NCBI GenBank assembly: GCA_051294905.1
Contig: CM119381.1
Span: forward strand, 22,754,001-22,818,000
Length of the DNA stretch: 64,000 nucleotides
Direction of reading: 5' to 3'
From: Botryllus schlosseri
Lineage: Eukaryota
The notes below the pieces were generated by a model, which saw nothing but the letters and a program-made list of their open reading frames with translations, made no database searches and was not told where the DNA came from. Positions 6,835 to 60,659 of the stretch are shown here, piece after piece. Position numbers and translations under genes: made by a program. Within the stretch, counting starts at the first letter, position 1, and each line of letters opens with the position of its first letter.

Positions 6835-7620
6835 GGACATTGGCATTCTGTACATCCGAGAAACTCTCCAGACAAGCATTATGTACGGCTTGGCACGCTC
6901 GGGCACACATTCTGACGTTTAGCTAGGCGACATGACTATGCGATTTCTTTGATACCTGAGGCCGCTTCACGGTCGAGCACGCGTTGCCGTATTTAGGTGG
7001 AGAGAATGGCTTCGTAGTGCTCCCGTGTAATATATCGAACTGACGTAACGGTGATGCTGTGTCGTGTGGTACGATCCAAGCAATCCGTCATGTTAATACG
7101 AGGTAGCGCACCAAAGGGAACACTGTACCTTTTTCGTCTCGTGTGCTTTTTAAGTTAGGCCGTCTGTGCGCTGTCTCTCGCGCGCACCATTCTCCGCAGT
7201 TTACCGAAGCCGAGCTTGAAGCCGGCGTCTCTCGAAGCCTTTTTTTTCGACGAACGCGGGCTTAGGATACGTCACCGCGAAACAAATACCTCGGATTCCG
7301 CGCGATCCGAGTAATCTCGATCGACCGTCGAGCCGTGAGGGTGGAATTTTCGGCGTACAGATAGTCTGCAGACTTGGTTTATTGTGATACACAGTCAGCT
7401 GATTCAGGGATTATCTGTGCAATTCCAAACACACATTAGTAGCAATACTATTCCGTAACGCACCTAAATACTATATTCGTTATTTGAAGTATATATATCG
7501 ATTACTCATTAACCATTGGTTGTGGCGTATATGCCTGCTGCATATAAGCGGTCTCCCAGTTCGGGTGCTCCGAAGGCCGAAATCGATAACAGAGTAGGCA
7601 AGGGACAGCGTACTGCAACA

Positions 7621-9762
7621 ATGTCGGCGACAGCGGGCTCATCTCGGCCGTCGAGGCAACACTGTTATTTATGCGACCTTCCCCGCATGCCGTGGGCGAT
7701 GGTTTTCGACTTTACCGAGCCTCTTTGCAGAGGTTGCGTCAATTACGAAGGCCCGGATAGGATCGAGACTGTTTTGGATGTCGCGCGGCAACAAAAGCAC
7801 GCGCATCAAGGCTATCGACAGAGCGCCGCCTCGGGCCATGAACAGCCTACCGCCAATGGCGGTCATTATCAGACACCTTCGCATCACCCCACAAGACGAT
7901 CTCCACCGCATAAGCCTAGCGGTAACCACGCGTCGGACGCCCATCGACTACAAGACCGCTACCATTTATCGAATGATATCAAAACAAGCCTGTACGGGCA
8001 ACAGCACAATTCAAATTCCAGCAATTCTCACAAGTCCAGAATCAACGGAATACATTTCCAACCGAGCAAAGACGAAGACACGCCGTTGTCGATATCAAGC
8101 AGACGCGGCTCGCTGCCGGCTACTTTAGCAAACCCAACCGGGCCTGCACATTTACTAGCTGCCAACGGATGTATCATCGGCAGTCCTGGTTTATTGCCAA
8201 GCCACTCTGCAGCTAGACACGGACTTATCCCGGAGTACGTAAACTCGCCTGTGTTATCACGACAAACCAGCACCGGGCCTTTGAGCGCAAAAATGCCAGG
8301 AGAACCTCTGCACAGTCACCATTTAAGCATATCCCAATCGGCGTACGCTTTGGTCGACGAAAAAGCAAGCCTCGTGAGAGACGTGATAGGCGTGCTGAAT
8401 CAATGCGCGCCATTCGAGGTTAGGTTCAAGAAAGACCACGATTTGAAAGGCCGTGTGGTATCTTTCGACGCTCCGTACAAGCCAGGGTCGGAATACGAAA
8501 TGAAAGTGTACATCGAGTATCCTATCGGCTCCGCGAGCGTGTATTCGAGCGCGTCCGGTGTGGCGAAACAGATGTTTCAAGACACCCGTAAAGACGTGGG
8601 AAAAGGTACTCTCAGCTCCGGTTTTAAGTATCTAGAATACGAGATGAAGCACGGTTCCGGGGAATGGAGATTGCTGGGAGATTTACTACCGGACGCGACC
8701 CGATCTTTCAGAGAGCCGCTATCTCGCGAGGCGCTCCCACACCCGTATTTGGACCCTAACCACCCTGATTTGCCTACCACCACAGCGGGAATTACAAGCC
8801 CCGGGTATTTATCATTGAAAGGCGTGTCGCAAGGTGGTAACTTTCCGAGAAAACGCAAGTTATCGCCCGACACAGACGCGGACGCTCCTAGCAATAAGTT
8901 TTTCGACGCTGCGCTGGCTAGCAGGATATCATCCAACGAGGCTTTTTCGAAGCTAGGACTTTTGCAAGGCACGATCGGGTTCAACATGCTGCAACAGCAG
9001 CATTTGGCGATGGTGACGGCGGCGCCTACGTCGTCTAAAGTGTCTTCGGCGCTGATAGCCGGTCGTATTCCTACTTCTCTATCTTTGGGTCTGCACGAAC
9101 ACCGCCCCAGGGCCGGCAGCGACGGTCCACAAAGTCCTAATCACGGCTCAAACGCACAACAAGCGAGCTCTCCGACAGAAAAACGCACAAGCCCGTTGAC
9201 AAACAGCGCACAGCGTACTAACAGCAGCGGAAGTACAGGCAGCACGTCTTCCATGTCGCAAAACCCTGCTCCGGTTACGTCTCCTGTGACGAGAGGCCCG
9301 TCTCCGCCTAGCACTCAGAACGATTCGAGCAATCACTCCGACAGGCGCGCGCGTACTTCGAGCAGCACTAGCAGTAATGGTAGCGGTGTAGGCGGACATC
9401 CAAGCAGCACAAGCCCGAAACAAGCCGCAACTGTACCGAACACGCCTACATCTAGCATGCCGTTGCCTGGGGCGCCCGGAGCGGTGCCAATGACTCCTTT
9501 AAATTGCGCGTTATGCCGCGGCAGGCTGGAAGACACGCATTTTGTGCAGTGTCCTTCACAGTCGGCGCATAAGTTTTGCTTCCCGTGCTCGCGATCTAGC
9601 ATTAAAGAACAGACGGCCCGCGGGGGAGAGGTGTACTGTCCGAGCGGGATGAAATGCCCGCTGGTTGGGTCAAATGTGGCGTGGGCTTTCATGAAAGGAG
9701 AGATCTCCACGATTTTGAGAGGAGACGTGAAAGTGAAGAAAGAAACGGAGCAAGAAGCTTAA
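7621..9762 (+). CDS. IRF2BPL: Interferon regulatory factor 2-binding protein family (IRF2BPL/IRF2BP1-like) transcriptional corepressor / E3 ligase, single coding exon, 713 aa from ATG 7621 (an in-frame ATG at 7531 would add 30 aa)
   Basis: N-terminal C4 zinc finger [33 protein letters not shown]; middle domain [10 protein letters not shown]...[19 protein letters not shown]...[25 protein letters not shown]; LPHPYLD; RKRK NLS; C-terminal [36 protein letters not shown]...[15 protein letters not shown] lines up with the vertebrate start MSAAQVSSSRRQSC. Confidence 0.95.
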
Positions 9763-24616: not shown

Positions 24617-25549
24617 TCATTTCAATATGAACATACTATTCAATGTACAATTGTACATTGTACATGCGAAAACTTTGATCAATGTTGACACCGGTTGTGT
24701 TGCTGCCTAACTTCCTTCGATTTACATCGAATTTGAGAGTATGATCGCTCCTAATGTCAAAGTATTTGGATACAATTCAAAAACCGATCGGTCGACATAT
24801 TTCGAATTTCGTCCGCTTCCGAGTGACAGAAAAAAAAGATGATTTGAGCGAAATTTTGGTTTCAGAGTTACCGAAATTTTCCGTTACGACCCCGCCTTTG
24901 ACACGCCTGCGTTAGGTGGATTGGAGATTTCAAGTCAAGATCGCTGTGGATTAGTCAACAGTTGTGGTGAAAATTCAGAGGTTTGGAAGCACTGTCGCCA
25001 AAATACGTGAATATATTAATATCCAAATCCTTATACACCTCTGCCGGAATAACACACGAATCTCATCTCTGCGAGTTCGCCTGTAGGCCCGTGTGGGTGA
25101 AGCCATGTCCCGAAGCCGGATGCCGAAAATCTGTTTGGCTTTCGGTCTGCGCGCTGTTTGCGGTACTTTTACATCGATCTATTCAGCTCTCCCACACATA
25201 AACCAGCGCAGTTTGCCCACCGTGCTATTGCAGTTCGTTACGGTGTCCTGCAAGGTCGCTTGTTAGCGCTTGTCAACATGTTTTTACATGCACGCCGGTA
25301 CTGACTCACAGGTGTAAACTCAAGATGTGGATCCGCTAAGCTAATTCGGTGTGTGCATGCGTGGTTGTGAACTTAGAACACATAAACAGTAAACAAGCCT
25401 CGGGATCTGAGGACTACAATGACGTCATTAATGGTTATTTTAGATGACACCAGAGCAAACGTGAATTTAACAGTATATATATAGGACGATTGCCATCAGT
25501 GACTGGCCTCTGGTATGAATGGTGGGGTAACTGCTCGGTGTGCGGGTAT

Positions 25550-26143
25550 TAGGGTTGTTCAAAAATAAGTTATTTTCTGTATTCCGGGGATTCAGTGATT
25601 ATGTTTTTAGGTTGCCTAAAAAACGTTGCACACCAAATTTAGCTCTATTCCAACCACTAAAAGCCGACGCTGAGCCAATTGAAATTTTCGAATTAATTAT
25701 AAAAAATAAAATTTCAAATTTTACTGTCAACTCCATAAAATTGTAATGTTGCCTGAAATAACGATGCAGAGCACTTTTTGCTCAATTCCAACGGGTAGAA
25801 GCGAAGTTAATAGTAGCTGAAAGTGTTAAACTTGCAAAAATCGCATTGACGGTGGGACAACCCAGAATTATTAATGAAAAACTCAAATTACTTCGCTTCT
25901 ACGGGTTGGAATTGCGTCAAATTTATTTTGCATCGTTTTCGTAGACAACTCAACAATTTCTTGAGGTTTACAGTAATATTTGAATTTTTTCTTATAATAA
26001 ATAAATTTCAATTGTCTCTGCATCGGCTTCTACTAGTAGGAATCGAGCCAAATTTGGTGTGCAGCGGTTTTTTTTGGCAACCTAATAATACAATCAGTGA
26101 ATCCCCGGAATCCGGAAAAACAAGTTATTTTCGAACAACCCTA
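25550..26143. mobile_element. Foldback MITE related to 3259-3917
   Basis: tagggttgttcaaaaataagttatt...aagttattttcgaacaacccta; shares internal ccaaattt/caattccaac blocks. Confidence 0.8.
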
Positions 26144-27847
26144 CTGTGTATGCAGCTGTAGACAGTTCTAAATCCATTTTGTTTCAAAATTTCTACTTCA
26201 TATGCACGAACAACCTACTTGAATACTATACAGAAAAGTGGAAGGAGGACCTTACTGATGACCTCTAGTCTCTTGGGGCCCGATAAAGATATGTTGAGCT
26301 TGATAAGAGGACGATGACTCAAAAAGGTTTGGAACCACTGGATTAGGTGCAGTTGCGTAGAACAGAATATGTGTCGCATTGTAGACATTACGTTCAAACT
26401 GCATAGTCAGTGTACTTAACACCACCGTCTAACTGTTGGCTACCTAGTACTTGGATTTGGAGCACATCATAATGGAGTCAATATGTATTTCTCACTGTCA
26501 TTTGATATTGTAAGTTTCACCCACACCAATGTGGCAGCAAGAATTATAATTTGGAGCGGGCGAGATATTTTAACAACGTGAGAGAAGGAGGGAGAGAAAT
26601 ACCATTCATCATCACAGAAAAAGAAAAAGAAATAACTAAAAATTCAGATACGTAATACCATAGTGTCCTATATGGTGTCGACACAGGCAAATCTCACGCC
26701 TCAGTGAAATTGTATCACGTCACAATTTCCATTTGGCTACAGGCAATTAGACGGTCATTTTTAACCGGCGTGCCGAGCATTAAATTTGGTAAAACATATA
26801 TCAATCAAAAGCTGACTCTGCACTGATTACGAAAATATAAATTTTATTTCGCTCGTGGCCCTGGAACTCCCACAATCAGCCTCGAATTTTTCATTGTTAT
26901 GGAGATTGGCATTGGGACGCAACAATTCTGTCTGGCGAAACGAGAGAGTAGCTCAAGAGAAAAAGAGCAAGACAGCATTGTTCAGCATTGTTTCGTCCCA
27001 ATGCCAATCTCCATAACAATGAAAAATTCGAGGCTGATTATGGGAGTTCCAGGGCCACGAGCGGGATAAAATTTATATTTTCGTAATCAGTGCGGAGTCA
27101 GCTTTCGATTGATACCCGTTTTACCAAATTTTAATGCTCGGCAAGCCGGTTACAAATGACCGTCAAATTGCCTGTAGCCAAATGGAAATTGTGACGTGAT
27201 ACAATTTCACTGAGGCGTGAGATTTGCCTGTGTCGACACCATATAGGACACTATGGTATTACGTATCTGAATTTTTAGTTATTTCTTTTTCTTTTTCTGT
27301 GATGATGAATGGTATTTCTCTCCCTCCTTCTCTCACGTTGTTAAAATATCTCGCCCGCTCCAAATTATAATTCTTGCTGCCACATTGGTGTGGGTGAAAC
27401 TTACAATATCAAATGACAGTGAGAAATACATATTGACTCCATTATGATGTGCTCCAAATCCAAGTACTAGGTAGCCAACAGTTAGACGGTGGTGTTAAGT
27501 ACACTGACTATGCAGTTTGAACGTAATGTCTACAATGCGACACATATTCTGTTCTACGCAACTGCACCTAATCCAGTGGTTCCAAACCTTTTTGAGTCAT
27601 CGTCCTCTTATCAAGCTCAACATATCTTTATCGGGCCCCAAGAGACTAGAGGTCATCAGTAAGGTCCTCCTTCCACTTTTCTGTATAGTATTCAAGTAGG
27701 TTGTTCGTGCATATGAAGTAGAAATTTTGAAACAAAATGGATTTAGAACTGTCTACAGCTGCATACACAGTAGGGTTGTTCGAAAATAACTTGTTTTTCC
27801 GGATTCCGGGGATTCACTGATTGTATTATTAGGTTGCCAAAAAAAAA
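26068..27847. repeat. 1.78-kb palindrome (arms about 26068-26919 and 26994-27847)
   Basis: An identical 60-aa ORF lies on both strands (26215-26397 - and 27517-27699 +). The outer arms read as exact reverse complements where I compared them. Confidence 0.95.
26658..27256. mobile_element. Foldback MITE at the palindrome centre (same family as 31110-32176)
   Basis: TIR ccatagtgtcctatatggtgtcgacacaggcaaatctcacg; a homologous end ccatataggacaccatgg occurs at about 32156-32173. Confidence 0.75.
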
Positions 27848-27931
27848 TTTTTCAGTTGGCCGCAGCTTCGAGCCCCCTTCCGATGCTTTCATGCCCCCCA
27901 AGGGGAGGGAGGGGCAGTTGGAGAAACACTG
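27848..27931 (-). mobile_element. Truncated end of a hAT MITE (family of 47958-48281)
   Basis: Minus strand cagtgtttctccaactg...atgaaagcatcggaagggggctcgaagctgcggccaactgaaaa matches 47958-48040. Confidence 0.7.
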
Positions 27932-28283
27932 CACTAGCTGGTCGATGCGTGGCATATGTTTGCTCAAAGCGCATCGAAAGTCATGCATTGGCGCAACAAG
28001 TCGGTTTCGTTTCTTCGACTTGGTAGTCATCAGAGATGAAAATCCTTGCTCGCACTCCCACGTAGAAGGTAAAATTAGCAGCTGGGGAATAACTTGAGAA
28101 GCTAGAGTCGAGTACGAGGAGGTCATGCTAAGCCTGATGTTTATTGGAGAACAATTTTTGTGTTCAACCCCACCTGAACTAATAACTCTCTTCGATCGAA
28201 AAAAAACAGAATCTGCTCGCGTACCACCTGGAAGACCTTCGCGTACCACTAGTGGTACGCGTACCACAGGTTGGGAACCACTG
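27932..28283 (-). mobile_element. hAT (Buster/Charlie) remnant with a transposase dimerisation-domain fragment
   Basis: LLILPSTWECEQGFSSLMTTKSKKRNRL...DFRCALSKHMPRIDQLV; terminus cagtggttcccaacctgtggtacgcgtacc at 28283. Confidence 0.85.
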
Positions 28284-30572
28284 CTGTGAGCGGTGTGATG
28301 CGCCGCCGATGTGCGTACGTTGGCCATAGGCAAGGTTTCCCGATGCATTCAAACTTGCAGAGGAGTCAACCCGCGTCTGATAGCCGCAAGGTAACGCCGT
28401 GGAATTTGATGAGACATAAAAACCGTGTACGATGATCGTACAAGTATTCGTGACCTTCTAAATATCAATGTCAAGTCGCCCGCGGACTAAATGTGCGTAG
28501 GTAATGTTACATTCTGTACGTTGCTGAGCGTGCAATAACTATATCGCCATAGATTCCACGCTGATTATAACACCGATTCGTGATTATATCTACGATGTGA
28601 ATTTTGGTTTTGTCCGAATCGAAACGGGAGGATTTATTGTTATTCAACATTTGAACATGCGATACTTGAGCAATGAGCATGTGACTTCGTAACCCGAAAA
28701 GTAACACTATAACCCCAACATCAACCGAGCGACTTGAGTCAACCATGTCCCAACCCTAACCCTATGTTTAACCTACATGCCCGAGTGCCGAAGTCTATTA
28801 TGTTGCATGCTAATATGTACATATGATTTTTGTGATTGACTTAATGTCGCATATACATATCTTCTCAGTACTAATTTCCATGTCGATTTATGCGCTCTGG
28901 GTGTTGGTAAAAACAATCAGCTTCTCCTTATCGAAAAGCGGGCCAGAACGGTTCACTATCACGCACAAATAGCGCCCTTTGGCTGCAGCAATGAGTATCG
29001 CATCATTATCAACAAATCCACCATGCTGCAGCAATGTTGGCATCTTTACCATCCAGAACTATCACCGTTTGTGTTTGCCAATCACGGCTTACGATCAGCG
29101 CGCGCTGCAAATAAAACAACGTTCCACGACGACTATTGACGTCATAATGACGCAAGAGACCGGCGCATCGGCCGACTGTTGGCGACAATTAAGTGTCGGC
29201 CTGTCACCAACCCGGTTATTTCGGTCTCGAAGCGTCCGAAATGGAGCTGGCAGTTTCTCACGGATCTATTATTGTAGCGTTCGCTTTTTCATGCAGGAAA
29301 ATGCGGGTCGCTGTCACGCACCAGTTACGTAACGCGCTTCTGAGCAAATAAATATTTTTTGCTCACAGCCAGACTTGTAATAATGTAGTTGTAGCCGTTT
29401 AATAAGACTAATTACAGCGAAATGTCGGTAATATAAATCTAATCCAATTAGTGAAATGTTTCTGTGGTCTAATGTTGATTCTAATCCAATGTCTGAATTT
29501 ACTGAAAATGTTACAAGAGAGCGGTATTGTACGAAACCAGACAACCTTGGTATACAGCCATTTGCCATTCCCATGCTACTGCGCATGAACTTTGATTTGA
29601 TATGACCTGAACTTGATTTCTGTTGTATATTTTTCTTATTCGAATTTAATTTAATTTCCAAGTAATTTTAATTCTAATCTAATTTAATCTAACTCTGATT
29701 TGAGGCAAGACGGATGAATTGTCAATATAGTACCGGTGGGATATGGCATTCATTGCGATGATGTGATGTCTGATAGATATTGCGCTGTAGATGGAGCACG
29801 CATATGGTCGGTTTCGGGTTACGGCCTTCGTTATTGGATTACGTGATCTTTCCGGTACTTAAACGTTGCTGGCATTTGCCGTGTTTTTTGGGACACCTTG
29901 ATACCTCCCGGCTGTTTAACAGTCCGACCCGACGCACAGCCTATTTTTTATGACAAACGCGTAACACAGCCTATTGTAAATATTGATTGGTCCGGGCCTA
30001 CGATAACTTAGGTCTGAATGAAGTCGTTGTACAATGTACATACAGTTAACCGAATTAGAATGGGCTGGATTTTACGAATTCCTCACTGATCTAGGATAAT
30101 TACGATGATGATAATAAATAATAATGTATGCAATTCTGGAACCTCATCTACCGCTATTCTGTAATCTGACTATTTCGTGTATTGCACAGGAATACCAATT
30201 AGACTTGATTACTGAAATTTTAACAGTTCACTTCAATCTCGCCATTTTCCGTATAGGGGCAGGTTGCTCCCCTGATTATGTGTGTATTTATCAGTTTTAC
30301 CGTGAATAAAGAGTATAATGTATGAACCGATTTAGGAATTTGTATTTTGTGTGTCTGGATTTAGAAATTTGAAGTCGACTCAGTACTGATATATTGAAAT
30401 TGCATCAAATCATAGGGTTGGTCACATGGCAACTATTGAAGAGTTAAAAATGACTGTTACCTCAAAATATGGATAATTTCAAGTCGCATTGTGCAATATC
30501 CATTATTTTGGAATGACATTGACACAGACACCACCAAATTCGTTCCAGGCCATAGCGACGTATGGTCTATAT

Positions 30573-47957: not shown

Positions 47958-48281
47958 CAGTGGTTCTCAAACTGGGGGCGCACGCTCCTTCGTGAAAGCA
48001 TCTGAAGGGGGGCGCGAAGCTGCAGTTAACTGAAAAGTTTCTTTGCGTTCCGCGCGGTTTACCTTCAATTCATAGTTAATGCTCTGCGTGTATGCTGTAT
48101 ATATAGTCATAATTTCATATTTGAGAATTCTCTCGTCAACAGTCATAACCTTCCATGCAATCGAACTATCCGTTGGGATTGCTAGCATTCTGGTTGCATT
48201 TTGTGACATGACGATATGGGAGGCGCGAAATATTTCACTATCAAAAAGTGGGGCTTGTCTAAAAAAGTTTAAGAACCGCTG
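47958..48281. mobile_element. hAT MITE with a near-perfect 8-bp TSD
   Basis: cagtggttctcaaac / gtttaagaaccgctg; ccctaact vs ccataact. Confidence 0.8.
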
Positions 48282-56754: not shown

Positions 56755-56955
56755 CGCAAAAGACCAGGCCACGCGACCCGCGCTCCGACTCGGAAGACAT
56801 CTTTTGCCCTGACACCGAGGACTTCGTGACCCGGGTCTACGGGAAGGCCGAATATCAGCCGCGCCGGACCACGGTCCACAACCCCTACTTTCACGTGAAG
56901 TCTCCTGTGAAGAAACCTACCTTCCGAAAGAAGAAGGCAGTCGAAATAGTGAAAG
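56755..56955 (+). CDS. KIAA0586: TALPID3 exon
   Basis: ttttgcag acceptor, G|gtgctg donor. TEDFVTRVYGKAEYQPRRTTVHNPYFHVKSP resembles [32 protein letters not shown]. Confidence 0.88.
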
Positions 56956-57321
56956 GTGCTGGAAATTGGATAGTCATTGTTAACCAGAACGGGTTAAAAT
57001 GATAGATTTAGCCAGGATGAGAATTTGAGAAGGGCTGATGAAACTTTTTTCAACTAGCCAGTGAAATTGAGTATAAAAAAGTTATTTTTGAACAGTCCTA
57101 CTCAACACACACTATACGTGAGAGCATTTTGAGAAGGCAAATACTTGGAAAAATCTACCTGAACATTTCGTTAGTCCCTCGTACTCTACAATTACTATGC
57201 TCCTATCTTGGACATTGTACCTTTTGTTACTTCACGACCGACTCAAGCAGCGTATCTTTTTACTGATTTTTTGATATTATTATTTTATTTTTTCAACAAT
57301 TTTGTTTTCATCTCTTCACAG

Positions 57322-57648
57322 CAAGCATGGTGAAATCGGCCAGGACCCAGACATCCCCTACTGTCCAGTCGCCCCAACCCCAGTACTATTTCACCCCCAC
57401 TTCGTCCCCAGTCCGTCCGCCCATTTCGACCAGCCCCACCCCGGGGCAGTTGATACCCATGGCCGTTCCGTTGGGACCGCCCGTCATATCAAACGCTCCC
57501 GACCCCACCCCGGTTGTTATCCATCAAACTGACCCGGCTTACACTACTTTCGTGGTGGACACACCCAAGCAAAGGAAGATAAGGATCTACAACCCTGCTG
57601 ATGCGTCGCACACAAGAAAACCGAACACAGCAGTCATATCAGTTCGAG
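57322..57648 (+). CDS. KIAA0586: TALPID3 exon
   Basis: tctcttcacag acceptor, G|gtaggc donor. VKSARTQT, GQLIPMAVPLG and RKPNTAVI match VKSIRTQT, GHLIPMAILLG and KKPNIAIV. Confidence 0.9.
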
Positions 57649-57836
57649 GTAGGCTTATGCAATTAATGCATTATTATACAACAACACAATTTTTTAAAGG
57701 CATTTATTTAAAATGCAACCCTACCTGTAGTATTTAAAATTACGTTTTCGATAAATATAAATACATTAAATCAAGGCGCGACATCATTTGATATTTATCA
57801 CGCAAATATAGAATAGGCGAGGTGCCTTCTGTTCAG

Positions 57837-57997
57837 GCGAGGACGGTCCTGACCTGAGCGTTCACAAGATGGATAACATCGACATCGACACCCCTGAAGT
57901 AAGCGAAATGACAGAGGTCAAAGAAATCTACTCTCCCGTCAGAGACACGGTGCCCGGGTCGAGACCAGTACTGAAACACGACAAGGACGAATCGGAA
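57837..57997 (+). CDS. KIAA0586: TALPID3 exon
   Basis: ccttctgttcag acceptor, GAA|gtaagt donor. DGPDLSVHKMDNIDID resembles DPPQLTVQVLPSVDID; phases are consistent. Confidence 0.8.
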
Positions 57998-58229
57998 GTA
58001 AGTTTTCAACCTGCGATACGCACATATTGGGAATTTGAGAAATATTGTAATGGACCGATACCGCAAAATGTCTTCTTGTTCGGCGTGGTAATTGATTTGA
58101 CACCGATTGGGCTCAATATAGAGAGGCTTGGAACTGAATAAACCTATCACTGACTACGACTGTTTATTGCCTTATTTTTGTGACTTTCATATGATCGGTT
58201 GACATTGAACCTGCAACGCTTGACCATGG

Positions 58230-58415
58230 GGTTGAAGTTTAAGTTTGGGTGGATTATTGTTAGAGTTAAAGCCAGGGTTACAGTTAGGGTTAGGCAAGGG
58301 TTAATTTTTGGGTTACGGGAAAAGGGTAATTTTGGATATGTGTTGGGATTAGAGACAGTTTTGGGGATACAAGTGTAAGTTTTGGGGTTAGGGTTGGGAT
58401 TACGTTTAGTTTAGG
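58230..58415 (+). repeat. Degenerate (TTAGGG)-like tract; others at about 12505-12565 (+), 13045-13105 (-), 28748-28765 and 42150-42170
   Basis: ttagggttaggcaagggttaatttttgggttacggg...ttggggttagggttggg. Confidence 0.65.
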
Positions 58416-58609
58416 TCACATGGTGTAGTGTCGCATTTTCGAATGTCTGGCAACCCTTTTATCTATATCATCGCGACCGCATAACAGTATCGGCATCTGT
58501 GTTACTAAAATATCGGTATCGGACAGAAGTTTTAATATCCCTCGCTGTATGGTGTGACGGGCTATTGAGTCGCGAGAAATCATTCACTTCAACCTGGCCG
58601 TTTCTTCAG

Positions 58610-58770
58610 GGTAGCGACGCGAGCCTCCATATCGAGCTACGGGGTGCGGCTAACAGCGGGGTCCCTCTGGACTACCACGGCCCCAGTTTCCCGCCCGCGC
58701 GCCCGCAGGGACGCGAGCTGAACGCTGACGACATCGCGGACGAAATCGACAAACATGAGCTGGAGCAAGA
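58610..58770 (+). CDS. KIAA0586: TALPID3 exon
   Basis: tttcttcag acceptor, GA|gtgagt donor. DYHGPSFPP resembles KYNGPPFPP. Confidence 0.85.
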
Positions 58771-59082
58771 GTGAGTTTAGGGCCGGATTATATCGTCACG
58801 CCCAGAATTCTGTTATCAGCAGTAGAACTGTAGAACTATACACAAGTCGTGTGTATGTCGCCGATTTTCATCATAGCGCCGTCTTCAGGTGGCGCACGAC
58901 AGCAGAACCTACCCCCTTGGTATATATCTCCGTAGGAACTAGGAAACGGTGTATTTGACTAATTTCCACTCACGGGAATATGGGTGAAAGCATACTTTGG
59001 TACTTTTGCAACCTACGCTATAGTGTAAATATTTAAATACACCTATGTATCATATTTATCATACCGTGTATTTAGAGAGTAA

Positions 59083-59497
59083 AACTCTCAGCGAAAAGAA
59101 TGTATTCACACTACAAAAGATGCTGATCGATCAAAGGCCATTAATTCTGCCATCGGCAAACATCTGTTGGATAATCCGATTTGTGCGAATAATTATCGAG
59201 ACGACCGATTTCGAATCGTAGGTCGAGGCCGTTCACAATTCCATTTGTGTGCCTTGGAATCAACTTTTATCAAAATACACCAACCAAAACTCTGTCAACA
59301 AAAGGAGTTCGTGTATCACCTAAAAATAATACACTGAACGCTCTCTCATTCGAAATTTCATGCTGGTGACGTCATATTTTGTGATACGATTGTTGATATA
59401 CAATGTTCTTTCCAATTCTCTTCTAGTTGCTGACGATTACCCCTGACGAGTGTCAGCCGAAAATATTCGGGTTCATTTCAATATGAATATACTATTT
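59083..59497 (+). mobile_element. 5'-truncated Penelope-like element: open GIY-YIG C-terminus (59083-59337) plus 3' pseudo-LTR with hammerhead, inside a TALPID3 intron
   Basis: ATG-less frame reads INSAIGKHLLDNPICANNYRDDRFRIVGRGRSQFHLCALESTFIKIHQPKLCQQKEFVYHLKIIH*, the typical PLE endonuclease end. It runs directly into the abundant repeat. Confidence 0.88.
59439..59472 (+). ncRNA. Minimal type-I hammerhead ribozyme (family 1), intact core; predicted cleavage after C59468
   Basis: ACCC-CUGACGA-G(UGUCAGC)C-GAAA-AUAU-UC-GGGU: full catalytic core, 4-bp stem I, 1-bp stem II, palindromic AAUAUU stem III. Confidence 0.8.
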
Positions 59498-59731
59498 AAC
59501 TACAAAAGGTGGTACTCGAAAACAGCCTACCACACCCCACGGGTGTGTATGATCAGAATCCACCCTAGCATATTGCGAAGATATTGTGATGTTAAATGGA
59601 GAATTAAGAATAGCAGTGCTTTCCCTTCGACAATTTAGTGTAGTTGAGTTCTGTTAGTGAAATATTCTCTGTAGATTTCTCTCTCTCTCTCCCCCACCGA
59701 ATGTTGCTTAGAATTCGGGACATATTTTCAG

Positions 59732-59844
59732 GACGGTTCGATGGGTGGAACAGGAGATACTGGCCAGAATTCTATCGGAGCTGCACCCGCCCGGCTCGCA
59801 CGACATCAGAGACTCGGGGCCGGTCCAAAGCCCGAGCGACCCAG
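59732..59844 (+). CDS. KIAA0586: TALPID3 exon
   Basis: attttcag acceptor, G|gttagg donor. TVRWVEQEILARILS resembles LIQWVEQEIMSRIIS. Confidence 0.9.
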
Positions 59845-60070
59845 GTTAGGCTATTTCTTGGTTGACTTACGTGACGTCCGTGGTCACAGTATATTTGGAC
59901 GGATAATGTTAGCGATAGAAAAATAGCCCCTGGGTTGTTAATATTTTTGGTTGGCCTATCGTTTTCATGTTCTACAATTTATATTTTCGCCATCGTGACT
60001 TCACTGCCCGCGTATTCCACGGCTGGATTTACAATGAACATACTCGCTCAGGTCACTGTTATTGATGCAG

Positions 60071-60659
60071 GTGCTTTGAATCCGGAGAGCTTGCAGCTTT
60101 ACGTGGACGCTGGCCTGCCAGTAGACGACGCAACGATAAACAGACTCGTGGAAGAGGAATTGACTCGAATCTTGAGAGAGATGATAAAACGACCCGCACA
60201 AGACCAAAACCCGCCCAGACCCAAAACGCCGGTACCCAAGACCCGACCCCCGAAAACTCCCTCTCACCAAGTACCCACCCCGTTACCCACTCCAGATCCC
60301 AGCCCTTGCGCTAGCGTATCAGAACAACCCCACTTGCACACCCCATCTTTAACCCCCGATTCTTCAATGGCCGAGTCGCTACCCGTAAAAGACCCATCTC
60401 CAGCCCCAAGTCCGGAAGCCCGAGCTCCATCCCCGGAAGTGGATTCCCCTCCCAAAACCCCAGAAGAAGTGACCCTCGTAGAAACCCCGTGTGCCACCCC
60501 GCCTAGTACCCCGAAACCGGAACCGGCGGAGCCCCGCACCCCGGTTTTGTCTGTTAAGTCCGTATCGCCTCCTGTTACCCCAAAAAGGGTTCTGCCGGAC
60601 CCTTGGGGCGATGCGCAGTTTCCATTGCCTGAAGAGATGTGTGCTCCCAAGCCTCCAAG
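60071..60659 (+). CDS. KIAA0586: TALPID3 Pro/Thr/Ser-rich exon
   Basis: SLQLYVDAGLPVDDATINRLVEEEL resembles [25 protein letters not shown]; also TPLPTP and PWGDAQFPLPEE (vertebrate PWGDGDLPLEEE). gatgcag acceptor, AG|gtacga donor. Confidence 0.9.

What the first reader, a model, noticed from the sequence alone, without database searches (positions are those of the whole stretch)
26068..27847. 1.78-kb palindrome apparently extended outward from a foldback MITE
The inner arms (about 26748-26919 vs 26994-27166) show roughly a dozen differences, while the outer ~680 bp read as exact reverse complements. The outer arms contain unrelated material: unique DNA, a hAT-end fragment and the terminal ~75 bp of a different MITE. 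This fits a recent fold-back primed in the old MITE hairpin that copied flanking DNA, meaning a MITE seeded a genomic palindrome. An assembly or chimeric-read artefact is the main alternative.
Basis: partly seen in the sequence, partly recalled or inferred. Interest (0 to 1): 0.7.

Follow-up and report, generated by a model that had tools for sequence, protein, structure and literature searches.

The report
Fold-back palindrome seeded by a MITE
A small hairpin-shaped jumping gene (MITE) seems to have folded a broken DNA end back on itself, so that 589 bases of neighbouring DNA were copied in reverse and some DNA on the other side was lost; this kind of repair scar is already known, and here no sequencing reads could be checked.

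Summary
The palindrome is real in the sequence. 26068-26748 and 27166-27846 are exact reverse complements (681 bp, 0 differences). The inner arms differ at about 13 sites around a 52-bp loop.

The anatomy needs correcting. The foldback MITE is 601 bp (26657-27257), not about 420 bp. Its own outer 91 bp on each side lie inside the exact zone, so 589 bp of true flank was copied.

- **Which arm is the original:** the left. It runs on into a complete older MITE (25550-26143), and the right arm holds only that MITE's last 76 bp.
- **Right junction:** the right arm ends in an A-run, joined to the middle of a truncated hAT-N element. Positions 543-989 of about 989 are present, and the first 542 bp are absent from the window.
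- **Missing target duplication:** this copy lacks the family's 3-bp TSD (AAT on the left, ATT on the right). Of 40 other copies, 34 have a perfect TSD and none has palindromic flanks.
- **Private changes:** all 17 deviations of this copy from the family consensus lie in the inner 405 bp.

Best reading: a recent fold-back, or template switch, primed in the MITE stem, with fill-in copying and a microhomology join to a distal end.

The mechanism is known; this is a new natural instance, of modest interest.

The parts
25550..26143 (.). MITE-B: a complete 594-bp copy of an old, abundant foldback-type MITE family. Its last 76 bp (26068-26143) form the outermost part of the left arm.
   Evidence: full-length matches at 77-83% identity at many loci, with 4682 first-look candidates; its own terminal inverted repeats lie at 25550-25623 and 26069-26143.
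26068..26656 (+). Template (original) arm outside MITE-A, 589 bp. It holds the last 76 bp of MITE-B, then DNA unique to this locus (26144-26656) that includes an old hAT-type end fragment (26210-26346).
   Evidence: apart from the 26210-26346 fragment, this stretch occurs in the genome only in the two arms; 0 differences from 27258-27846; it is contiguous with the rest of MITE-B.
26657..27257 (.). MITE-A: a 601-bp foldback MITE. Arms 26657-26930 and 26983-27257, loop 26931-26982. The family makes a 3-bp TSD and has thousands of copies.
   Evidence: 40 full-length copies match these limits; the consensus arms are nearly perfect, and the window copy has 16-17 private deviations, all between 26749 and 27153.
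26749..27165 (.). Old core of MITE-A, which kept its own unmirrored mutations and the asymmetric loop. It was not re-copied by the event.
27166..27257 (+). Outer 92 bp of the right MITE-A arm. The priming point of the fold-back lies somewhere in this interval or at its end, and the stretch was probably re-synthesised from 26657-26748.
   Evidence: none of the 17 deviations falls in the outer 2x91 bp, against 29.7% in 40 other copies. P is about 0.0025 if both ends are original and about 0.065 if only the left end has to be clean.
27258..27846 (-). New arm: an exact inverted copy of 26068-26656. It starts flush with the MITE end (ATT in place of the expected TSD AAT) and stops in the T8/A8 run of MITE-B.
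27839..27847 (.). A9 run at the distal junction. A8 comes from the copied T8 of MITE-B. It overlaps the A-run (A3-A5 in five close copies, A6 inferred for this copy) that begins the retained part of element D. The possible microhomology is 2-5 nt.
   Evidence: other D copies read A3-5 T6-8 CAG with a constant run length of 11, and the BLAST match of D reaches back to 27842.
27842..28283 (+). Element D: the right 447 bp (positions 543-989) of a roughly 989-bp non-autonomous hAT element (TIR CAGTGGTTCCCAACC, 8-bp TSD in L022), truncated exactly at the palindrome junction.
   Evidence: five copies at about 98% identity continue 542 bp further left. That left part is absent from the 64-kb window.

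Best explanation
This is a one-off structural rearrangement, not a mobile element or a gene.

Inferred ancestral order: MITE-B, unique DNA U, MITE-A, an unknown right flank, then somewhere further on a full hAT-N element D.

Inferred steps:
1. A break arose in or to the right of the right arm of MITE-A. A stalled fork is the equivalent alternative.
2. The break left the top strand as a 3' single-stranded tail.
3. The two 274-nt MITE arms annealed within that strand.
4. Any unpaired 3' flap was trimmed back into the outer stem, to a point between 27166 and 27258.
5. A polymerase extended that end using the same strand as template. It re-copied the outer MITE stem, all of U and 76 nt of MITE-B.
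6. Synthesis stopped in a T8 run. The new A8 end was joined, through a few A:T pairs of microhomology, to the other broken end, which had been resected into the middle of element D.

Result: a 589-bp inverted duplication of flank (681 bp of exactness), loss of the original right flank, and loss of at least 542 bp of D.

Shown: the anatomy, the direction of copying, the missing TSD, the truncation of D, and the young age of the arms relative to the MITE.

Inferred: the break, its position, the enzymes, and whether the event was break repair or a replication-fork template switch.

Likely consequences: a locus whose single strand can form a hairpin with about 865 paired bases. It may be fragile and, if transcribed, could yield long double-stranded RNA. 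Neither was tested.
For: - Exact 681-bp arms around a diverged core and an asymmetric loop.
- MITE-A spans 26657-27257 and belongs to a family with a 3-bp TSD. Of 40 other full-length copies, 34 have a perfect TSD and none has complementary flanks. The window copy has AAT on the left and ATT on the right.
- The family consensus arms are near perfect. The window copy has 16-17 private deviations, none mirrored and all inside 26749-27153. In other copies 29.7% of deviations fall in the outer 182 bp.
- Relative age: an inner divergence of about 3.8% predicts about 45 arm-to-arm differences in 589 bp if the arms were as old as the insertion. None is observed, so the duplication is younger than roughly 7% of the MITE's age.
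- The left arm continues into a complete MITE-B, and the right arm holds only its last 76 bp.
- U exists nowhere else in the genome.
- The right junction falls inside a hAT-N element whose left 542 bp are missing, at an A-run that allows 2-5 nt of microhomology.
- The strand polarity fits extension of a 3' end reading its own strand.
- The same chain of steps is documented experimentally: fold-back priming at inverted repeats near a break, flap trimming by the proofreading activity of Pol delta, fill-in synthesis, and capture of the other end by end joining (PMC10622511, PMC7467729, PMC11724301; abstracts read).
Against:
- There is no ancestral or empty allele. The deletion is therefore inferred only from the truncated element D, which could have been truncated earlier.
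- The microhomology lies in a homopolymer run and is weak evidence.
- The left outer 91 bp of the MITE is also free of private changes (P about 0.065), which this model has to accept as chance.
- Experimental fold-back insertions that end by capture of the second end are mostly 5-34 bp (PMC11724301). This one is 589-681 bp.
Confidence: 0.68

Rival explanations
1. Assembly or library artefact. A chimeric or fold-back long read, produced in vitro at the MITE hairpin, was built into the consensus, and the animal's chromosome has no inverted copy.
For: Zero differences in 681 bp is what an artefact would give. Hairpin-forming repeats promote polymerase template switching in vitro. Both outer breakpoints lie in abundant repeats and homopolymer runs. 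No read evidence could be obtained. Earlier notes on this genome list other fold-back palindromes that were also unchecked by reads.
Against: A missed-adapter or snap-back read is symmetric right through the axis, and its arms run to the end of the molecule. Here the axis keeps a 52-bp asymmetric loop and about 13 unmirrored differences. The arm stops after 589 bp of flank and joins a second, specific sequence. The assembly then continues without N for at least 26 kb on the left and 36 kb on the right. An artefact would therefore need two independent chimeric joints inside one consensus, and it would also have to remove the real right flank. None of about 58 other repeat loci surveyed (about 200 kb, 40 MITE-A copies) shows the pattern.
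Confidence: 0.2
2. An older inverted duplication whose outer arms are kept identical by arm-to-arm gene conversion, as in sex-chromosome palindromes. On this reading exactness says nothing about age.
For: Conversion between palindrome arms is well established for large palindromes (general knowledge). A diverged core could block conversion tracts and so keep a sharp boundary.
Against: The arms are only 681 bp long. The part nearest the axis, where conversion in a hairpin or cruciform would be easiest, is the part that is diverged. Zero differences leaves no trace of any earlier divergence. This rival still needs a fold-back-type origin, so it changes the dating, not the mechanism.
Confidence: 0.06
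3. A transposase-made rearrangement: hAT alternative transposition, as with maize Ac/Ds, or movement of a composite 1.78-kb foldback element.
For: hAT-type ends lie in both arms (the 26210-26346 fragment and its inverted copy), and a hAT-N element abuts the right arm. Alternative transposition is known to make inverted duplications (bioRxiv 10.1101/2020.01.07.897926; abstract seen).
Against: No breakpoint coincides with a transposon terminus. The breakpoints lie in a T8 run inside MITE-B, inside MITE-A's stem and in the middle of D. The 8 bp next to the candidate composite ends, ACCTAATC at 27566-27573 and CTGTGAGC at 28284-28291, do not match (read). U is found only at this locus, so the unit has not transposed.
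Confidence: 0.03
4. MITE-A inserted into the centre of a perfect palindrome that already existed.
For: The MITE sits exactly on the axis.
Against: Such an insertion would leave a direct 3-bp TSD (AAT...AAT) and three extra bases on one side. The flanks are instead exact reverse complements, with no extra bases. By its private mutations the MITE is much older than the arms.
Confidence: 0.02

Closest known systems
Fold-back (foldback-primed) inverted duplications at double-strand breaks near inverted repeats, in yeast and human (PMC10622511, PMC7467729, PMC3907307)
   Same: The axis is a pre-existing inverted repeat whose spacer survives. The duplicated arm is an inverted copy of the DNA on the proximal side. 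Sequence on the distal side is lost. The 3' flap is trimmed before priming, which fits the re-made outer stem seen here.
   Different: In those systems synthesis runs on to make a hairpin-capped or dicentric chromosome that needs secondary rearrangements, giving duplications of kilobases to megabases. Here synthesis stopped after about 0.6-0.7 kb and the chromosome was closed locally.
Short templated fold-back insertions at breaks, with Pol delta synthesis at one end and end joining at the other (PMC11724301)
   Same: The overall layout is the same: fold-back, limited fill-in, then capture of the second end by NHEJ or microhomology-mediated joining, leaving a local inverted insertion.
   Different: Those insertions are mostly 5-34 bp and are primed from microhomologies. 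Here the primer stem is a 274-bp MITE arm and the copied tract is 589-681 bp.
Replication-based template switching through inverted repeats (FoSTeS/MMBIR; the DUP-INV class of human rearrangements; recalled from general knowledge, not tested)
   Same: It predicts the same product: a switch to the complementary template at an inverted repeat, then a second microhomology switch downstream that skips DNA.
   Different: It starts from a stalled fork, not a two-ended break. The sequence alone cannot tell the two apart.
Ac/Ds alternative transposition and Mu killer-type inverted duplications in maize (bioRxiv 10.1101/2020.01.07.897926; PMC3440606)
   Same: An inverted duplication associated with a transposon, able to give a long hairpin RNA if transcribed.
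   Different: Those arise from transposase cuts at element ends, or they duplicate the transposon itself. Here the breakpoints are internal, most of the duplicated DNA is flank, and transcription was not tested.

Membership tests
Fold-back inverted duplication seeded by an inverted repeat | The axis is a pre-existing inverted repeat whose loop and older arm differences are retained | tested here: met
   The 52-bp loop and about 13 unmirrored differences lie inside 26749-27165. The repeat is a member of a 601-bp MITE family.
Fold-back inverted duplication seeded by an inverted repeat | One arm is in its native context and the other is a truncated inverted copy | tested here: met
   The left arm continues into a complete MITE-B (25550-26143). 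The right arm has only that MITE's last 76 bp and then unrelated sequence.
Fold-back inverted duplication seeded by an inverted repeat | The copied arm starts flush with, or inside, the repeat stem and replaces the native distal flank | tested here: met
   The TSD is absent (AAT/ATT), whereas 34 of 40 other copies have a perfect 3-bp TSD. None of the 17 private changes lies in the outer stem.
Fold-back inverted duplication seeded by an inverted repeat | Loss of DNA distal to the repeat | tested here: inconclusive
   Element D lacks its first 542 bp exactly at the junction, and that part is not in the window. Without an ancestral allele, the timing and size of the loss are unknown.
Fold-back inverted duplication seeded by an inverted repeat | The distal joint is made with little or no homology | tested here: met
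   An A9 run joins the two sequences, with 2-5 nt of possible overlap and no longer homology. The evidence is weak because the run is a homopolymer.
Fold-back inverted duplication seeded by an inverted repeat | The structure exists in the organism's DNA (spanning reads, doubled depth) | not testable with these tools
Mobile composite or long foldback transposon (the whole 1.78 kb) | More than one genomic copy with target-site duplications | tested here: not met
   26144-26656 occurs only in the two arms in 495 Mb. There is no TSD around 26068-27846.
hAT alternative-transposition product | Breakpoints at transposon termini, with 8-bp target duplications | tested here: not met
   All three breakpoints are internal to elements. 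The 8 bp flanking the candidate hAT ends do not match each other.
Palindromic read artefact (missed adapter or snap-back) | Perfect symmetry through the axis, with arms running to the end of the read or contig | tested here: not met
   The core is asymmetric and diverged. The arms end after 681 bp. Sequence without N continues for at least 26 kb on the left and 36 kb on the right.

The most novel reading that the evidence does not exclude
The thousands of long-armed foldback MITEs in this sea-squirt genome may be recurrent seeds of germline fold-back repair. On this reading they convert unique flanking DNA into perfect long hairpins, which could be fragile sites or raw material for hairpin-RNA and small-RNA loci. 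This locus, and the other fold-back palindromes noted elsewhere in the genome, would then be members of one active process, not isolated scars.
Probability: 0.1. Interest if true: 0.55.

Novelty: new member of a known kind. Interest (0 to 1): 0.33.

Why it matters
If real, this is an unusually readable natural record of fold-back repair in an animal germline. Because a MITE family consensus is available, several things can be read from one locus:
- which arm served as template;
- roughly where priming began, within about 92 bp;
- that the native flank and part of a neighbouring transposon were lost;
- that the event is much younger than the MITE.

It shows how an ordinary foldback MITE can enlarge itself into a hairpin three times longer (about 865 paired bases; ssDNA folding energy about -1070 against -318 kcal/mol) that now includes unique host DNA.

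The mechanism itself is established in yeast and in human disease, so the value is as an example and as a lead for a genome-wide survey, not as a new principle.

Tried and rejected
- **Independent contigs.** I looked for contigs holding the 201-aa ORF that spans the right junction (27746-28348, minus strand). Nothing is on record, and the tool notes that records of this genome may be left out.
- **A second haplotype or paralogous copy of the unique arm DNA in the assembly.** None found.
- **The missing left half of element D.** It is absent from the window, which holds only an unrelated copy at 74% identity (47993-48281).
- **Continuation of the palindrome beyond D, which would make D a later insertion into a longer arm.** No further inverted match within 25000-29000.
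- **Recurrence.** No other extended palindrome in about 200 kb of fetched loci plus the window, or around 40 full-length MITE-A copies. The sample is small against more than 2000 copies.
- **Gene context as a check on contiguity.** An IRF2BP-like ORF lies at 7.5-9.8 kb and TALPID3 exons at 56.8-60.7 kb. No gene brackets the palindrome, so this gave no help.
- **Rejected readings.** A mobile composite element, hAT alternative transposition, MITE insertion into an older palindrome, replication of a hairpin-capped end (this would make the core symmetric), and an inversion by staggered breaks (this would leave an extra MITE end beyond the right arm).

Full report
**Observation.** The region was read directly, scanned for inverted repeats and aligned arm against arm.
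- 26068-26748 and 27166-27846 are exact reverse complements: 681 bp with no difference.
- The inner arms, 26749-26930 and 26983-27165, differ at about 13 positions.
- 26931-26982 is a loop that is not palindromic.
- Position 27847 is an extra A with no partner on the left.
- The window has no N and an even base composition.

**Corrected anatomy.** The window lies at C11:22754001-22818000 of a 495-Mb assembly in 219 contigs. Earlier notes of this scan call the organism a sea squirt; I did not check this.

The core 26748-27166 belongs to a very abundant repeat, with 2047 first-look candidates and best matches of 94-95%. When flanks are included, full-length copies elsewhere match 26657-27257. 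The foldback MITE, called MITE-A here, is therefore 601 bp with 274-bp arms. The 91-bp stretch next to the core is the MITE's own outer stem; it is not a separate hAT-end fragment.

Left of MITE-A:
- 26144-26656 occurs nowhere else in the genome except in the opposite arm, apart from the 26210-26346 fragment.
- 25550-26143 is a complete 594-bp copy of a second, older MITE family, MITE-B (77-83% identity to other copies). Its last 76 bp are the outermost part of the left arm.

Right of the palindrome:
- 27842/27848-28283 matches a young repeat family at about 98% identity.
- In five other loci that family continues a further 542 bp to the left.
- The full element, D, is about 989 bp. Its terminal inverted repeats are CAGTGGTTCCCAACC, with an 8-bp duplication in L022, so it is a non-autonomous hAT.
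- The window holds only positions 543-989 of D, cut exactly at the palindrome junction. The missing half is not elsewhere in the window.

**What the MITE family shows.** I compared 40 other full-length MITE-A copies.
- *Target duplication.* 34 of the 40 have a perfect 3-bp target-site duplication and none has complementary flanks. The window copy has AAT on the left and ATT on the right. Its right flank is therefore the reverse complement of its left flank from the first base, and the native right flank is gone.
- *Source of the arm differences.* The family consensus has almost perfect arms. The arm differences in the window copy are its own mutations: 16-17 deviations from the consensus, none mirrored in the other arm.
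- *Where the mutations lie.* All of them fall between 26749 and 27153. In the other 40 copies, 29.7% of deviations fall in the outer 2x91 bp, as uniform decay predicts. Zero of 17 has P of about 0.0025 if both outer stems are original, and about 0.065 if only the left one has to be clean. This favours re-synthesis of the right outer stem from the left one. The private change at 26749 is not mirrored at 27165, so copying began between 27166 and 27258.
- *Relative age.* The core has diverged by about 3.8%. Arms as old as the insertion would differ at about 45 of 589 positions, and none is observed. The duplication is therefore younger than roughly 7% of the MITE's age, unless it is an artefact or has been homogenised.

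**Direction and junctions.** The left arm is the original, because it runs on into the rest of MITE-B. The right arm is the copy.

A 3' end in the right MITE arm, paired with the left arm of the same strand, would read that strand from 26748 down to 26068. This is the polarity of a top-strand 3' tail at the left side of a break.

Copying ended in the T8 run of MITE-B, giving A8. The retained part of D begins with an A/T run whose total length is 11 in five close copies (A3-5 then T6-8). The window has A9 then T5, so 2-5 A's could be shared. This is a microhomology joint, although a weak one because it lies in a homopolymer.

**Mechanism.** The best reading is a fold-back event:
1. The MITE arms annealed within one strand after a break, or at a stalled fork.
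2. The 3' end was trimmed into the outer stem.
3. About 0.6-0.7 kb was filled in.
4. The other end, resected into D, was captured by microhomology, with loss of the DNA in between.

Each step has experimental precedent:
- A break near natural inverted repeats drives inverted duplication. The proofreading activity of Pol delta trims the flaps and Pol delta fills in (PMC10622511).
- Long-stem hairpins work whether they are proximal or distal to the break (PMC7467729).
- Local fold-back insertions are completed by end joining at the second end (PMC11724301).
- Human inverted duplications form the same way (PMC3907307).

A replication-fork template switch predicts the same product and cannot be separated from break repair on sequence alone.

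The single strand of 26068-27846 is predicted to pair 865 bases, at -1070 kcal/mol with DNA parameters, against -318 kcal/mol for the MITE alone.

**Rivals.**
Simple palindromic-read artefacts are symmetric through the axis and have arms that run to the end of the molecule. This structure has an asymmetric, mutated core, a short arm and a second specific junction, and it sits in the middle of at least 60 kb of gap-free sequence. It would therefore need two chimeric joints and the removal of the true flank. I give it about 0.2.
- *Arm-to-arm gene conversion.* This could make an older palindrome look young. It does not change the mode of origin.
- *Transposase-based models.* These fail because no breakpoint is at an element end, no 8-bp duplication flanks the candidate composite, and the unit is single-copy.
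- *MITE insertion into an older palindrome.* This fails on the missing TSD and on the relative ages.
- *Replication of a hairpin-capped end.* This would have made the core symmetric, which it is not.

**Recurrence.** Nothing similar was found in about 200 kb of other loci or around 40 other MITE-A copies. Earlier notes of this scan mention two other fold-back palindromes in the same genome. I did not check them, and they are leads only.

**Verdict.** It is a new natural instance of a known kind of rearrangement. It has not been verified at read level, and the interest is modest.

Noticed in passing
Loci L005-L074 (40 MITE-A copies); window 26646-26659: MITE-A inserts into a palindromic target. 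In 34 reconstructed empty sites, T precedes the 3-bp duplication in 31, G stands before that T in 22, A follows the duplication in 29, then C or T in 31 (pattern A..GT|NNN|AY). The left flank of the window copy (ACGT|AAT) fits. The superfamily of the element was not determined. The TSD triplets vary widely rather than being restricted to TTA/TAA.
   Followed up: partly
window 27842-28283; L022-L026: The hAT-N family D (about 989 bp) has copies 97-98% identical to one another, so it may have been active recently. Its internal A/T run keeps a constant length of 11 while the A-to-T boundary shifts (A3T8, A4T7, A5T6).
   Followed up: partly
L012:1409-2504: One MITE-A copy lies directly against a 77%-identical relative of the same family. 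Its left flank reads like the family's own terminal sequence (…CACCATATAGG), which suggests self-nesting consistent with the target preference.
   Followed up: no
window 7516-9762 (+): An uninterrupted 748-aa ORF carries all three IRF2BP1/2 domains: the N-terminal zinc finger, the middle domain and the C3HC4 RING. It looks like an intact single-exon IRF2BP-like gene.
   Followed up: partly
window 56808-60657 (+): Three exon-like matches to TALPID3 (KIAA0586), covering profile positions 539-1070, lie in order on the plus strand. Upstream exons were not detected, so it is unknown whether the palindrome lies in the gene's 5' region.
   Followed up: partly
window 25550-26143: MITE-B is itself almost entirely a foldback: its two halves are 74% complementary over 615 bp. 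It is one of the most abundant families seen here, with 4682 first-look candidates. The window therefore holds two unrelated foldback MITE families side by side.
   Followed up: partly
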